Made by a program: the position numbers and the translations under genes. From positions 14,260,001 through 14,324,000 of the forward strand of contig OU015567.1 in the NCBI GenBank assembly GCA_907165135.1: a stretch of DNA of 64,000 nucleotides, in the 5' to 3' direction. The notes below the pieces were generated by a model, which made no database searches, was not told where the DNA came from, and saw only the letters and a program-made list of their open reading frames with translations. Source of the DNA: Oikopleura dioica. Lineage: Eukaryota > Animalia > Chordata. Positions 3,549-64,000 of this stretch are shown one piece after another; positions within the stretch are counted from its first letter, which is position 1; each line of letters opens with the position of its first letter.

Positions 3549-4784
3549 CGACAAAAAAATTATCCGGCCCGAGCGGGGTCGATCGATCGGTGCTCGCGCT
3601 TTTGGCAAAAAATATGTCCGACAGTTCTTCCAGGCGCACTACGTTCTACGCCTCCGCGAGCGCTGAACTCCCCTGGGCACCAGCCCCGGAGCAAAATTAT
3701 TTCCTCCGAACGAGACGTACCATATGATCACTAGGCTTAGCATACAAGTATGTCTAATCGAACAATATTGACAAAAATGCCCAACGCCGCCTTTTAACAA
3801 GAATGGCTTTTAATTATCCAAAAATGAGCTGATAAAAGGTGAATCCAGAAATAATTAAGGCTCTCTCATCAATAATCTACTCAACATTAGATTAAAAACC
3901 GCGAACTTAGAAATTACTTTCCGTTTCTTTTTTTTTCTTTAAATTTAGAATTTTGCTATCCTGAAATCAAATTTTAAAACCTATCTTTTACAAATAAAAT
4001 TTTTGAATTAAAAAATGCTGAGGTTGTTGGTCGTTTATTAGAACTTTGGTACTGAGGATGTATTTTTGCGAACGGAATCAAAATCAAAACACCCGTTCTA
4101 AGTTCAATATTTACGAAGAGCTCACGAGCTTCTTTCTTTTTTATGTTCACGTAAATGGAACTTTGCGATTTATTTGAACAAGCATCGCTTGAAGACATTC
4201 TGAACGGGTCCAAAAACTGCTCAACGAAACAAGTTAATAATACCATCAGATTCAAAGTTACCACGTTTTTCTAGATTCGTAAATCTTTATCGTTTTCGTA
4301 AAGTGCCAACAGAGATTTTCTTCAGTTAGCTTCATCAACTTACCTGGTTTTCATTTACCAAATTCAATTGTAAGTCATTTCTTTTTTACGATTTTGTAAT
4401 TCTGAAACTTTTTTGTTGTTTTTGAATTCTTGAGTCTGAAATTGGTAGCTTTGTTCTTGTGGCAATAAGCCAAAAATTCTTGAAACAAAGCGCGTTGAGT
4501 TTGAGCTGTAGAAATCTATAAAACTTTCGGAGTCGTAAAGCATCATTTTTTGGGCAAGGAATCAGTCAGCTTTTTCATCGTTTTTATTCCAACCCAGGTT
4601 ATTTTTGGCTGTAATTTTAATTGCAGGTGAATGCACCAAAGAACGCTGAGATAATTGAGTTGTCAGCCTTTTGTTTTTAACCGGAGGCGAAGTCGGAATT
4701 TCGCCGAAACGCCGTCTGAACGTGAAGAAATTTTGAAGACAAAAGAGTTTTTTCAGATAAAATAAAAGTAATCGCCGGGCCAGG

Positions 4785-61254: not shown

Positions 61255-61313
61255 CTTTCTTTATTATCGTGTTATCTTTATTGCTTTTAGGAAATAAAAG
61301 TGCTTTTAGACAT

Positions 61314-64000
61314 TTATATGTACAGAAGTATTGTTAGAATTAATATGCTTGTTGTATTGATGATTGGAATCATCGAGGAAGAGTCGGCATCATCGTCTTT
61401 CTTATTCTAAAAAGAGATAAATATAGAAAGTTTTTATTTAACCATACTTTGGCAAATTCCGCTGCGGATAGAGCAGCGGTAAAACACGCATTTCTGTCCA
61501 AGTTGACCGCAGTGTACTTGGTCGCTAGTCGTTTATCGCTGAAATGGCCATCTTCGTCTGGGCCAGAGACAAGTGCACCATTAAGGATCTAAATTTTTGA
61601 TGTTACTTTTTTGCCTGGGTTTTTCATTTCTGAAATCAAACCTGCATGTTTGGGGCGTCGCGATCTTTATAGCCCTCGGAGGTACACTGCAAAGGTCTAT
61701 TCGGACAACTTGCGCCTCGATGGAAAGCTTGGAAGGGATAGCTATCGCCGTAGCCGACAAGGTACGATCTACCAGAGGAGCCAAGAAGATAATCCATCTG
61801 TTTGAAGCCGAATGTTTTCCAAGAAGTTCGAATTCCAGGCTCAATCTTCGCGCTGAGTTTTTCTGCCGCCAGGAAGCATAAGAAAGAAGCGGAGCTTGCG
61901 TATCCAGTTGCCGCGTATTTCGAGGGGAAGGCAAGACCATACACGGTTTTTTGAACATCTTCGGAGTAAAAATCGCAGAAGCCCTTGATTTCGTCCAAAT
62001 GAGTTGTTGTTTCTTCATCTTCCTCAAGCGCCAGCATGAGTTGAACGGCCGCGACTTTTGTATCGACATCAAAAATTTTCGGGTTGCTTTGGAGAGTTTC
62101 TTCGGAGTCAGCAATATTTCGTGCTGTTTCGAGGTAGGTTGTGGCGGAGTCTTCATTTTTCAGCGCTTGATACATCCAAATATTCGCCCAGGCAAGTTCG
62201 TCCTTGAAATTGCTCGTTTGATACATTCCTGCTTCAGGAACATGTTCGGCAAAAAAACCTTCATTATTCTCTGCGAATTGCATGACACTTTCTGCTTTTG
62301 AGATGAGTTTCTGGGAGTATTCTGTGTCGTCAGCAAAGACAATACTGGTCGATGCAAGTGCACAGACTATTTGCGCAGCTAAATCGGTTCCTTCTTGATT
62401 GTCTGTAACTGAGTAAATTGGCCGATTCGCTTTCATATCTTCGGCGCGACCCCAAAACTCATTCTCGTACGTCTGGTTTCCGATAGAGGCGACGATTTTG
62501 GTAGAACGAGCTGCATTGTGAAGCCAGTCAGCACCATGCTTGATGATGTCTTTTACTTCTTCCAAATGTTCCCCGTAAGAATCAGGGTACTCGATGACGC
62601 TCCAAGCAAGCATGGTGATGGAATAAGCCATTGGGAAGGTGTACTTCATGGTTCCTCCGCCGTCAAAGTAACCACCTGTTAAATCTGTATCGTCTCCATC
62701 AATGTCTTTTGAAAATTTTAATCAGGATCTTTATGAAGTACTATACCTTGGATTGTAGCAGTCTTTCTCCATCCTATCGGAAAGTCTTCTGGAATTTCAC
62801 CTGCTCTTTGAGCGTGATAAAACAGGAGCGTTTTCTGAAGCGCATGGAAGTAATCGATTCTATTTCCACTGTCTGGTCTGTCCGGATCGTAACCTTCAGG
62901 ATCAGCTTGACTTCTAGCACCAGATTGACTCATGTCGCCCACTTTAAGACCTTTTCCTGGAGCTAACCGAGGTGGAGGCTTAGCGCCGTATGTCTCGTGG
63001 TCAATCTTGCCAAGAAGCGAGAATAAAAACATCGCATTGTAGTCCATAGCGACAGATGACTGCTGTTGCTTCCAGGGATCATCGTCATATCTATCAAATT
63101 CATCGGGACCACCAACCAATGCTCCATCAAGCTGATGTCGATTTGGAATTCCTGTAAACGAACCGCAGGGCTCTGGCTGCTCGGGACAGAAGGATTCTTT
63201 GTGATAGTAGCGCGTCGGATAGTCGTTTCCGTATCCAACAACATATGATCTTCCATTGTCCCCAAGAATGTAATCAAGCTGACTTTGTCCGAGAACAAAG
63301 TTCGCATCAGGATCAATTTTCATTTGAGCAGCCATGAAGCATAAACCAGCAGCTGCAGCAGCATGTCGAAGAGGTCCCCAATCGTTGAGATAGAGTAAAC
63401 CAAGGGGAGTTCGCTTAGCTTTGCCACCGTAACCTTTATCTCGGCAGAAAAGACGGAAAGTATTCTTATATCTGGCTGCTTGTGCTTGCTTTGAAATCTC
63501 CGCCATCAAGTAGTGAACAGCTGGTGTCTTGTTTTCCCAAGAAAAGGAAGAAATGTCTTTCTCAAGATGTTGATTTTTGTAGACTCCGACGGCATTGATG
63601 AGATATCTCTGCTTTCCAGTTGCTTTATAAAGCCAAATAGCAGCCCAAGCAAGCTCGTCATAAAATCCCTTGAAGGATTTGTACGCTTTTGCTGCCTCTA
63701 ATCAATAATTATAAATTCGATTATTTGAATTAAGCAAAGTACCTTTGAAAGTCTGGTCATACTTTCGCCGCTGATCAGGTTTCCACGCCATCTCAAACAG
63801 CTCCATAGCATGTCTTCGACAATCATCAGCGTAATAAGCATCGATTTCAGCAAAAACAATTGACGTGGCGGCCAAAGCAGCGGCAGCCTCAGCAACTGGC
63901 TCAGTTCCTTTGTGATTTACATCAACTTTGTAGCTCTTTCTTTGGGATACCCTCCGTGTGCCGGGAAAACCTCCGTGTGCCGGGATTCTCGGTCAAAATC
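61314..64000 (-). CDS. Tandem GH9 (endo-1,4-beta-glucanase family) domain protein with GPI-like C-terminus; 5'-truncated by the window
   Basis: Two successive GH9 (alpha/alpha)6 repeats (DELAWAAIWLYKATG..SWENK..QLDYILGDNGRSYVVGYG..GALVGGPD..DYNA; then YFHALQKTLLFYHAQRAG..DLTGGYFD..KYTFPMA..DELAWANIWMY..DYLLGSSGRSYLVGYG..HRGASCP..GALVSGPD). Last exon DDDADSSSMIPIINTTSILILTILLYI*. Confidence 0.88.

What the first reader, a model, noticed from the sequence alone, without database searches (positions are those of the whole stretch)
61314..64000. Tandem GH9 pseudo-cellulase with a GPI-anchor-like tail: candidate cellulose-binding surface scaffold
GH9 catalysis needs the DAGD base Asp and the Glu of the NEVAxDYNA motif. 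The upstream domain has QSSVAMDYNA (Glu to Ser, about 63053). The downstream domain has GGYFDGGG (base Asp to Gly, about 62653) and YTAVNLDRNA (Glu to Ala, about 61508). The fold motifs and many aromatics are retained. The protein ends in a small-residue omega region plus a hydrophobic tail (SSSMIPIINTTSILILTILLYI). In a cellulose-secreting tunicate this suggests a non-catalytic, membrane-tethered, multivalent cellulose binder that might guide microfibril deposition, analogous in role to plant COBRA/KORRIGAN (inference).
Basis: partly seen in the sequence, partly recalled or inferred. Interest (0 to 1): 0.7.

Follow-up and report, generated by a model that had tools for sequence, protein, structure and literature searches.

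The report
Dead double cellulase with lipid-anchor tail
This larvacean (Oikopleura-type) gene encodes a secreted protein made of two cellulase-like domains that have both lost their cutting residues and that ends in a lipid-anchor-type tail. It is kept intact across several related plankton lineages, so it is a good but untested candidate for a cell-surface protein that holds cellulose rather than cutting it.

Summary
On the minus strand lies a 9-exon gene of about 1,007 codons. It runs from window 61314 to about 65334, past the window edge. The layout is signal peptide, GH9 domain D1, Pro/Gly linker, GH9 domain D2, then a polar stretch and a hydrophobic C-terminus.

Aligned to termite NtEgl (1KS8), both domains read DGGG where active enzymes have DAGD. 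The acid Glu412 is Ser in D1 and Ala in D2. The conserved His is Glu in D1 and Asn in D2.

It is not a decaying pseudogene. Collinear orthologues sit on marine-metagenome contigs at 88 to 46% identity. For D2 against the closest one, pN is 0.08 while pS is saturated at 0.74. All orthologues keep D1's exact dead-site pattern and its cleft Trp/Arg residues, and all end in a GPI-signal-like tail. Diverged-lineage RNA reads show spliced transcripts.

D2 has also lost two cleft Trp and an Arg and evolves about twice as fast, so the "multivalent binder" idea is doubtful. D2 may serve as a pedestal for D1.

A 2026 preprint lists the orthologue as "GH9-16" among cellulases. I found no remark there on the dead sites in the passages and supplements I read. 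Cellulose binding, GPI anchoring and the expression site remain untested. The scan noted this same stretch once before (s1-378177).

The parts
61277..61282 (-). AATAAA, putative poly(A) signal about 32 nt after the stop codon
   Evidence: Read directly from the sequence. Its function is an inference.
61314..61406 (-). Exon 9: 30 codons plus the stop (61314-61316). It encodes an acidic/Ser-rich stretch (DSSS), a polar spacer and a hydrophobic C-terminus, i.e. a GPI-attachment-signal-like tail.
   Evidence: All five orthologous lineages end the same way in character but not in sequence (mean Kyte-Doolittle of the last 12 residues is 2.2-3.6, of the previous 12 is -1.2 to 0.5).
61407..61447 (-). 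Intron 8 (41 nt, GT-AG)
   Evidence: Frame change plus splice sites. Intron identity to the L039 orthologue is about 0.5, against 0.78 for exons.
61448..61588 (-). Exon 8: last helices of D2. It carries YTAVNLDRNA (61487-61516), with Ala (61508-61510) at the position of the catalytic acid Glu.
   Evidence: Pfam positions 405-444. Alignment to 1KS8 and 1IA6. Family profile column 414.
61589..61641 (-). Intron 7 (53 nt, GT-AG)
   Evidence: A spliced contig in metatranscriptome run X1 skips exactly these 53 bases (joint 588/642 in L024 coordinates).
61642..62705 (-). Exon 7: core of GH9 domain D2. DGGG is at 62653-62664 (base Asp to Gly). A conserved NQT sequon is at 62470-62478. Asn replaces the conserved His (within 62446-62466). 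Val and Tyr replace the two cleft Trp, and Gly replaces the cleft Arg.
   Evidence: Pfam E 4.8e-75. 1KS8 alignment. Profile columns. RNA read depth at L024 1293-1590.
62706..62746 (-). Intron 6 (41 nt, GT-AG), inside the N-terminal part of D2
   Evidence: There is a stop and a frame change between the flanks. Splicing restores a stretch of exactly the same length as in D1 (WR...GGY). No spliced read covers it, and one X1 contig carries it unspliced.
62747..63697 (-). Exon 6: C-terminal two thirds of D1, including FSWENK, DWGPLRH, YHKESF and QSSVAMDYNA (63033-63062). It also holds the Pro/Gly-rich linker (about 62859-62996) and the first helix of D2 (from 62858).
   Evidence: Pfam E 1.8e-59, two stretches. 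1KS8 alignment. Coordinates.
63698..63742 (-). Intron 5 (45 nt, GT-AG)
   Evidence: Splice sites and frame. The Bergen orthologue protein reads straight across this junction.
63743..63935 (-). Exon 5: middle part of D1 (SYKVDVNHKGTEP...)
   Evidence: Pfam positions 136-198. Model.
63936..64000 (-). Start of a 519-nt insertion that runs to window-equivalent 64454. It has 25-nt terminal inverted repeats and a 10-nt target duplication (CCAAAGAAAG). It can be removed as a GT-AG intron, leaving one extra Arg codon.
   Evidence: TIRs 92% complementary, direct repeat 522 nt apart. (at least 8 long copies in the genome at 81-90%). It is absent at this site in all four orthologous contigs and in the diverged-lineage mRNA (joint 2936/3459).

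Best explanation
This is a real, conserved, expressed gene for a protein of about 1,007 residues. The order is cleavable signal peptide, GH9 domain D1, flexible Pro/Gly linker, GH9 domain D2, short acidic/Ser spacer, then a hydrophobic C-terminal GPI-attachment-type signal. Both GH9 domains are pseudoenzymes. The base Asp, the acid Glu and the conserved His are all replaced, so it should not hydrolyse beta-1,4-glucan.

Inferred mechanism: the protein is displayed on the outer face of the plasma membrane through a GPI anchor. The distal domain D1 keeps its substrate cleft (both Trp, the Arg, the DYNA motif) and its altered centre (DGGG, Glu, Ser) unchanged across all lineages. D1 therefore binds a single beta-1,4-glucan chain or a fibril surface without cutting it. 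The membrane-proximal D2 has a degenerate cleft and evolves about twice as fast, so it mainly acts as a rigid pedestal or a second interaction surface.

The most likely biological setting is the handling or tethering of nascent cellulose at the house-secreting epithelium. That would match the GPI-anchored scaffolding proteins postulated by Sagane et al. 2010.

Shown here: gene structure, loss of catalytic residues, conservation, purifying selection, and transcription and splicing in a sister lineage. Inferred: the GPI anchor, glucan binding, the tissue and the role.
For: Gene model: single ORF of 1,007 codons over 9 exons, with 7 GT-AG introns and 1 GA-AG intron.

GH9 identity: Pfam PF00759 at E 4.8e-75 and 1.8e-59. 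The best solved relatives are 1KS8, 4ZG8 and 3WC3.

Dead sites: against 1KS8, Asp57 is Gly in D2 and Glu412 is Ser in D1 and Ala in D2. D1's DAGD motif lies outside the exons compared with 1KS8, so its DGGG rests on the family profile. In that profile, built from intact paralogues, 14 paralogues plus outgroups from animals, plants, an amoeba and a cyanobacterium read DAGD/H/E. D1 reads DGGG/E/S and D2 reads DGGG/N/A.

Selection: for D2 against the orthologue L039, pN is 0.079 and pS is 0.742 (saturated). Exons are 78% identical and introns 39-51%.

Orthologues: collinear tandem genes lie on Tara and other ENA contigs L039, L041, L042, L043 and L047. In the four orthologous contigs that carry D1 (L042 lacks the DAGD stretch), D1 keeps DGGG, Glu for His, Ser for Glu, W256, W303 and R307. 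49% of D1 columns are invariant against 33% of D2 columns.

Targeting signals: signal peptides are present in ours and in the three orthologues whose 5' exon is on the contig. A hydrophobic extreme C-terminus preceded by a polar, small-residue stretch is present in all six.

RNA: reads of 85-95% identity from three bulk RNA-seq runs cover D1 and D2 exons. Joints or read breaks fall at four intron positions, two with canonical ends. One further intron is skipped exactly by a metatranscriptome contig.

Literature: filipin, monensin and neomycin experiments led to a model with GPI-anchored scaffolding proteins for house cellulose microfibrils, and to a call for in-silico candidates (PMC3071929). 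The GH9 family expansion and epithelial expression of some members are reported (preprint 10.64898/2026.03.31.715263).
Against: No binding, anchoring or localisation data exist for this protein. No GPI or signal-peptide predictor was available, so both signals rest on inspection and on conservation.

The RNA runs are from a diverged lineage. Expression in this genome's lineage, and splicing of the 519-nt inserted element, are therefore not shown.

The expression site is unknown. The preprint text I read says nothing specific on gh9-16. The house proteome supplements hold no hit for this gene id or for hydrolase terms.

GH9 clefts bind single chains, so binding to crystalline fibrils is not a given. 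GH9 also includes enzymes for other beta-glycans, so the ligand may not be cellulose.

D2 regained or kept the Glu in the two most distant orthologues. The history of the active site is therefore not uniform.
Confidence: 0.5

Rival explanations
1. The protein is a surface or secreted pseudoenzyme, but its ligand or partner is not cellulose. It might bind another beta-glycan such as chitin/chitosan or algal glucans in the gut. Or it might bind proteins, for example regulating or positioning the active GH9 paralogues or oikosins.
For: D2 has lost the cleft Trp/Trp/Arg yet is under strong purifying selection, so it must do something other than classical chain binding. D2 also carries an NQT sequon conserved in all six lineages, next to the former active-site loop. 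Chitin synthase genes are expressed in parts of the epithelium. The expression site of this gene is unknown.
Against: D1 keeps the GH9 cleft residues that are invariant in 14 intact paralogues. The animal makes cellulose at the surface where a GPI protein would sit.
Confidence: 0.22
2. One or both domains still catalyse a reaction using relocated residues. An example is the Glu that replaces the conserved His in D1, or the Glu present in D2 of distant orthologues. The reaction could be hydrolysis or transglycosylation.
For: The His-to-Glu change in D1 is invariant across lineages. D2 of L043 and L047 carries Glu at the acid position. Migrated catalytic residues are known in some pseudoenzymes (PMC10211241 abstract).
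Against: In every lineage the second Asp of DAGD is Gly in both domains. In this genome both the base and the acid are missing from both domains. In L039 even the first Asp of D2 is Asn. From established knowledge of Cel9A, mutants of Asp55, Asp58 or Glu424 are nearly inactive.
Confidence: 0.07
3. In this particular genome the gene is a null allele. The 519-nt transposon-like insertion in a D1 exon would truncate the protein after about 190 residues if it is not spliced out.
For: The insertion is specific to this genome. It belongs to a family with copies up to 90% identical. Read through, it meets a stop within 10 codons. No same-lineage RNA was available.
Against: A canonical GT (inside the inverted repeat) and an AG (end of the target duplication) remove it in frame, leaving one extra codon. 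All downstream exons remain open (327 and 361 codons without a stop).
Confidence: 0.08
4. The C-terminal hydrophobic stretch is not a GPI signal. It would instead be a short transmembrane anchor or a retention or cleaved peptide, so the protein is anchored differently or released into the house matrix.
For: The hydrophobic run is short (10-15 residues). No predictor or experiment was available.
Against: The run ends the protein, with no cytoplasmic residues after it, in all six lineages. It is preceded by small residues (Ser, Asn, Gly, Ala) and a polar spacer, which is the classical GPI signal layout. The gene was not found in the house proteome supplements.
Confidence: 0.1

Closest known systems
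Oikopleura dioica 'GH9-16' (GSOIDG00017527001), listed in SI2 of bioRxiv 10.64898/2026.03.31.715263
   Same: It is the orthologue in the Norwegian lineage. It has the same signal peptide type and the same D1 with DGGG. The metagenome protein P0031 appears, by eye, to carry the same sequence as the overlapping part of the SI2 text, and it keeps the Ser-for-Glu motif.
   Different: That paper files it with the GH9 cellulases of an expanded family. In the passages and supplements I read it does not remark on the lost catalytic residues, the tandem architecture or the C-terminal tail. Our copy is about 85% identical over exon 6 (P0031) and carries an extra 519-nt insertion.
Animal GH9 endoglucanases, e.g. 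Nasutitermes NtEgl (PDB 1KS8), and Thermobifida fusca Cel9A/E4 (1JS4)
   Same: Same fold family by sequence (E 6.7e-58 and 1.3e-51 to 1KS8). The overall set of family-conserved positions is similar: D1 keeps 48 of 62 and D2 keeps 49 of 68 near-invariant columns.
   Different: The base Asp (Asp57 in 1KS8 numbering), Glu412 and the conserved His are replaced in both domains. There are two domains in tandem. A lipid-anchor-type tail takes the place of a free C-terminus or a CBM.
Chitinase-like lectins (GH18 pseudoenzymes such as YKL-40 or imaginal disc growth factors); from established knowledge
   Same: A glycoside hydrolase fold that has lost its catalytic acid while keeping the sugar-binding cleft, so that it binds rather than cuts. 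D1 fits this pattern.
   Different: A different fold family (GH18 TIM barrel against the GH9 (alpha/alpha)6 barrel). Those proteins are soluble, not tandem and not anchored. Binding is shown for them and not for this protein.
Plant COBRA / BC1 (GPI-anchored cellulose-binding proteins) and KORRIGAN (membrane-bound GH9)
   Same: The proposed role is the same: an extracellular, membrane-tethered protein acting on nascent cellulose next to the synthase. KORRIGAN shares the GH9 fold.
   Different: There is no COBRA homology (only PF00759 is found). From established knowledge, KORRIGAN is catalytically active and anchored by an N-terminal type II transmembrane helix. This protein has a cleavable signal peptide, dead sites and a C-terminal signal.
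Other degenerate GH9 paralogues in the same genome (C4:1.398 Mb 'GH9-1-like', C4:14.32-14.33 Mb, C4:13.33 Mb)
   Same: They have lost part of the catalytic set (VDHD/N/T, HDGG/D/D and TGGD respectively). In the tree, the GH9-1-like gene is sister to D1 with support 0.89.
   Different: They are single domains with other partners or tails. None has the DGGG/E/S pattern of D1.

Membership tests
Glycoside hydrolase family 9 (Pfam PF00759) | Sequence signature of the GH9 catalytic domain above the curated cut-off | tested here: met
   Exon pieces score 254, 202.7 and 55.5 bits against a cut-off of 27.7. The best PDB relatives are all GH9.
Glycoside hydrolase family 9 (as an enzyme) | Asp pair of the DAGD motif (catalytic base) | tested here: not met
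   DGGG in D1 and D2. The second Asp is Gly in every orthologue, and L039 D2 reads NGGG.
Glycoside hydrolase family 9 (as an enzyme) | Catalytic acid Glu of the NEVAxDYNA motif (Glu412 of 1KS8) | tested here: not met
   Ser in D1 (all lineages). Ala in D2 (ours, L039) and Ser in D2 (L041, L042). Glu is present only in D2 of L043 and L047.
Glycoside hydrolase family 9 (as an enzyme) | Hydrolysis of beta-1,4-glucan | not testable with these tools
   Needs a recombinant protein assay.
GPI-anchored proteins | N-terminal cleavable signal peptide | tested here: met
   By inspection only: Met, a hydrophobic core of 13 residues, then small residues before Gln-Glu. Equivalent peptides are present in L041, L043, L047 and the Bergen protein. 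No predictor was available.
GPI-anchored proteins | C-terminal signal: small-residue omega region, polar spacer, and a hydrophobic stretch that ends the protein | tested here: met
   DSSS plus an 8-9 residue spacer plus a 10-residue hydrophobic end. The same layout is seen in all six lineages despite sequence turnover (pN 0.26 in this exon). The omega site itself could not be assigned.
GPI-anchored proteins | Covalent GPI attachment / PI-PLC release | not testable with these tools
   Experiment needed.
COBRA family | COBRA domain homology | tested here: not met
   A Pfam scan of all exon pieces at E up to 1 finds only PF00759 and two chance-level hits.
Plant class A GH9 (KORRIGAN type) | N-terminal cytosolic tail plus type II transmembrane helix, with intact catalytic residues | tested here: not met
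   The N-terminus is a short signal peptide followed directly by an acidic stretch and D1. The catalytic residues are lost.
Oikosins (house structural proteins) | Detected in the house proteome | tested here: inconclusive
   No occurrence of the gene ids or of hydrolase/cellulase terms in the 11 supplementary files of PMC3390340. Absence from that list is weak evidence.

The most novel reading that the evidence does not exclude
This conserved, larvacean-specific, GPI-anchored double pseudo-cellulase is the raft-anchored scaffolding protein postulated in 2010. Its distal dead GH9 domain grips nascent glucan chains or fibrils emerging from CesA2 complexes, standing on a second dead GH9 domain as pedestal. 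It thereby controls fibril elongation or orientation in the house meshes, and its release by phospholipase helps free the house rudiment.
Probability: 0.25. Interest if true: 0.8.

Novelty: new variant of a known kind. Interest (0 to 1): 0.6.

Why it matters
Tunicates are the only animals that make cellulose, and the larvacean house is woven from precisely ordered cellulose fibrils. Drug experiments pointed to GPI-anchored proteins as the scaffold for fibril elongation and for house release (PMC3071929), but no such protein has been named. This gene gives a concrete and testable candidate: a cellulase fold turned into a probable binder and tied to the membrane. It is conserved across lineages that differ at up to half of their residues.

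It also changes how the reported GH9 'cellulase' expansion in Oikopleura should be read. About 5 of roughly 20 domains have lost part or all of the catalytic set, so gene counts overstate hydrolytic capacity. More generally, it would be a GH9 counterpart of the chitinase-like lectins.

Tried and rejected
1. dN/dS as a ratio. Synonymous sites between our copy and L039 are saturated (pS 0.74-0.76; the Jukes-Cantor correction fails for exon 7). Only pN against pS is reported.

2. Origin of the tandem. Two trees (IQ-TREE LG+G4; FastTree with orthologues) do not resolve whether D1 and D2 are sisters (support 0.19-0.5). D1 and D2 are 34% identical. A recent internal duplication is rejected; an old one is neither shown nor excluded.

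3. Same-lineage RNA. None of the listed runs held the stretch. The three bulk RNA runs are under 95% identical (mostly under 90%), so depth is biased and the inserted element could not be tested. The joint 4100/4212 is an alignment break at a diverged segment, not an intron boundary.

4. Expression site. The passages of the scRNA preprint that I read name gh9-10, gh9-15 and gh9-expansin only. A search of the paper library for the gene ids found nothing useful.

5. Literature on GH9 pseudoenzymes. None of the 12 listed papers combined GH9 with any pseudoenzyme term.

6. Synteny, to identify the organisms behind the metagenome contigs. There were no credible neighbour matches. Their assignment to other larvaceans is an inference.

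7. Structure prediction, fold search, complex prediction and the large representative protein search were not run. No whole domain exists as an uninterrupted reference. The joined spliced model was used only inside a local script to check frame, length and positions, and it was never sent to a search or fold tool. All searches were made exon by exon, by reference.

Full report
LOCATION AND GENE MODEL

The window is G000:C5:14260001-14324000 of a 64.3-Mb, 19-contig genome. Tiny introns and the match to a published gene list identify it as an Oikopleura dioica-type larvacean. From memory, the size and contig number fit the Okinawa assembly; this was not tested.

The finding lies on the minus strand and runs off the window. 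I fetched the neighbouring DNA as L024, where L024 position equals window position minus 61000.

Stop-to-stop frames, splice sites and homology give a 9-exon model of 1,007 codons with a single terminal stop. It has seven GT-AG introns of 41-519 nt and one GA-AG first intron whose donor is uncertain by one codon. The joined model was used only inside a local script to check frame and positions. Every database search was made exon by exon, by reference.

The protein order is:
- signal peptide (Met at L024 4334)
- short acidic stretch
- GH9 domain D1
- Pro/Gly-rich linker (window 62859-62996)
- GH9 domain D2
- an acidic and Ser-rich stretch
- a hydrophobic C-terminus, with the stop at 61314-61316

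An AATAAA lies at 61277-61282.

Pfam finds only PF00759 in the exon pieces, at E 4.8e-75, 1.8e-59, 7.8e-15 and 2.9e-5. The best solved relatives are animal GH9 endoglucanases: 1KS8 at E 6.7e-58 and 1.3e-51, then 4ZG8 and 3WC3.

In the printed alignments to 1KS8:
- D2 has D-G-G-G opposite D54-A-G-D57.
- D1 has Ser opposite Glu412.
- D2 has Ala opposite Glu412.

Its conserved His is Glu.

From established knowledge of Cel9A and NtEgl, the two Asp hold the nucleophilic water and the Glu is the proton donor. On that basis neither domain should hydrolyse.

FAMILY CONTEXT

The genome holds about 20 GH9 domains. I built a profile from five uninterrupted paralogues and read the key columns in every exon piece.

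Fourteen paralogues, and outgroups from animals, plants, an amoeba and a cyanobacterium, read DAGD / His / Trp / Trp / Arg / HHR / Glu. The degenerate domains are:
- our D1: DGGG / E / W / W / R / YHK / S
- our D2: DGGG / N / V / Y / G / FHR / A
- a GH9-1-like gene at C4:1.398 Mb: VDHD / N / YHK / T
- a gene at C4:14.32-14.33 Mb: HDGG / D / D
- one gene at C4:13.33 Mb (TGGD, Glu kept), and a fragment

Of 69 columns that are near-invariant in the intact paralogues, D1 keeps 48 of the 62 observed and D2 keeps 49 of 68. The losses cluster at the active site. D1 keeps the cleft Trp/Trp/Arg and D2 does not.

IT IS NOT A DECAYING PSEUDOGENE

Two word searches with single exons found prokaryote-style gene calls on unspliced marine-metagenome contigs, many from Tara Oceans. 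Fetching the contigs showed collinear orthologues of the whole tandem gene in five further lineages:

| Contig | Identity to our copy |
|---|---|
| L039 | D2 only, 87-88% |
| L041 and L042 | D1 70%, D2 about 51% |
| L043 | D1 64%, D2 46% |
| L047 | D1 60%, D2 47% |

P0031 appears, by eye, to match the overlapping part of the Norwegian O. dioica protein text.

Against L039, over the D2 and tail exons (7-9), pN is 0.079 while pS is 0.742, which is saturated. Exons are 78% identical and introns only 39-51%.

In the four contigs that carry D1 (L042 lacks the DAGD stretch), D1 keeps DGGG, Glu for His, Ser for Glu, both Trp and the Arg. The motif around the lost Glu is letter-for-letter conserved. 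D2 always has Gly for the second Asp, but its other cleft positions vary. L039 even has Asn for the first Asp. The two most distant orthologues have Glu at the acid position.

D2 evolves about twice as fast as D1. Tree path lengths are about 1.06 against 0.57, and 33% of D2 columns are invariant against 49% of D1 columns.

TARGETING SIGNALS

All orthologues whose 5' exon is on the contig start with a typical signal peptide.

All six lineages end with a polar stretch rich in Ser, Asn, Asp and Glu, followed by 10-15 hydrophobic residues and the stop. Mean hydropathy of the last 12 residues is 2.2-3.6, against -1.2 to 0.5 for the 12 before.

The sequence of this last exon turns over quickly (pN 0.26) while its character is kept. 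That is what one expects of a GPI attachment signal. No predictor was available, so the omega site is not assigned.

TRANSCRIPTION

No RNA run of the same lineage was on offer. Three bulk RNA-seq runs labelled with the same species are from a diverged lineage, with reads mostly 85-90% identical. They still cover exons of both domains.

Among the joints, 3896/4025 has canonical ends (CT..AC on the plus strand). 3621/3716 lies at the predicted intron 3 with two extra letters. 2936/3459 is the precise junction across the site where our genome carries an insertion. The joint at 4100/4212 is an alignment break at a diverged segment, not an intron boundary.

A seawater metatranscriptome contig, about 93% identical, skips intron 7 exactly. 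One contig of that run carries intron 6 unspliced, and no spliced read covers intron 6.

THE INSERTION

A 519-nt element interrupts a D1 exon at window 63936-64454. It has 25-nt terminal inverted repeats and a 10-nt target duplication. It belongs to a family with at least eight long copies at 81-90% identity. It is absent at this site from all orthologues.

A GT inside the repeat and the AG at the end of the duplication would remove it in frame, leaving one extra Arg codon. Whether this happens is not shown. If it does not, this allele is null.

MECHANISM (INFERENCE)

The protein is secreted and probably GPI-anchored. D2 sits next to the membrane and D1 is distal. D1's strictly conserved cleft, together with a conserved non-catalytic centre, is the pattern of a hydrolase turned lectin. 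It should hold a beta-1,4-glucan chain without cutting it.

D2's cleft is degenerate, and it carries an NQT sequon conserved in all lineages near the former active-site loop. It more likely serves as a pedestal or a second interface.

The setting that fits best is the apical surface of the house-secreting epithelium. Sagane et al. 2010 inferred from filipin, monensin and neomycin effects that GPI-anchored proteins scaffold microfibril elongation and house release, and they asked for in-silico candidates (PMC3071929).

WHAT IS KNOWN

A 2026 preprint reports the GH9 expansion and lists the orthologue as GH9-16 among 'cellulases'. It discusses only gh9-expansin, GH9-10 and GH9-15.

I found no description of the lost catalytic residues, the tandem architecture or the tail. 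I also found no paper on GH9 pseudoenzymes in the held library. The house proteome supplements do not mention the gene.

The scan itself noted this stretch once before (s1-378177) and noted other GH9 genes with degenerate heads or anchor-like tails in the same genome. Those are leads, not evidence.

VERDICT

This is a new variant of a known kind: a pseudoenzyme derived from a glycoside hydrolase, here GH9, doubled and lipid-anchor-tailed. The structural statements are secure. Glucan binding, anchoring, tissue and role are inferences that ordinary experiments can settle.

Noticed in passing
window 63936-64000, continuing to L024 3454 (window-equivalent 64454): A 519-nt MITE-like element lies inside a coding exon of D1. 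It has 25-nt terminal inverted repeats and a 10-nt target duplication. It is lineage-specific and has at least 8 long copies elsewhere (81-90% identity). A GT in the repeat and an AG in the duplication would let it be spliced as a new intron, leaving one extra codon.
   Followed up: partly
L008 / L005 (G000:C4:1396005-1399226, minus strand): A catalytically degenerate GH9 gene (VDHD, His to Asn, Glu to Thr) lies 0.5 kb upstream of an intact GH9 on the same strand. The intact one ends in a Thr-rich stalk plus a short hydrophobic tail. The intact one has no evident signal peptide of its own. One tandem gene, an operon pair, or two genes: not resolved.
   Followed up: partly
L032 (G000:C4:13329500-13334500) and L026/L038 (G000:C4:14317500-14334000): Two further GH9 domains have part of the catalytic set lost. 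One reads TGGD and is followed by EGF-like Cys-rich sequence. The other reads HDGG, with His to Asp and Glu to Asp, and its pieces are spread over more than 10 kb.
   Followed up: partly
L036 and L025 (G000:C2:1.25 Mb and C2:12.43 Mb): Two GH9 copies on the same contig are almost identical in protein (tree branch lengths 0 and 0.06). This suggests a recent segmental duplication or an assembly duplicate.
   Followed up: no
P0056 / P0066 (ENA contig of 8,067 nt): A metagenome protein carries the end of one GH9 domain, a Thr-rich linker and the start of a second GH9 domain, with the catalytic motifs intact (Glu kept, DAGD kept). Tandem GH9 proteins that look active therefore also exist in marine eukaryotes.
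   Followed up: no
window 62470-62478: An N-glycosylation sequon (NQT) is conserved in D2 of all six lineages. It sits five residues before the position of the lost active-site His.
   Followed up: partly
L024 4134-4211 (window-equivalent 65134-65211): The first intron has no GT donor in frame. The best reading is a GA-AG intron. The sequence after it differs strongly between lineages.
   Followed up: no
L024 1678-1916 (window 62678-62916): A contig of the seawater metatranscriptome run X1 spans intron 6 unspliced, with 4 extra letters. It could be pre-mRNA, DNA carry-over or intron retention in that lineage.
   Followed up: no
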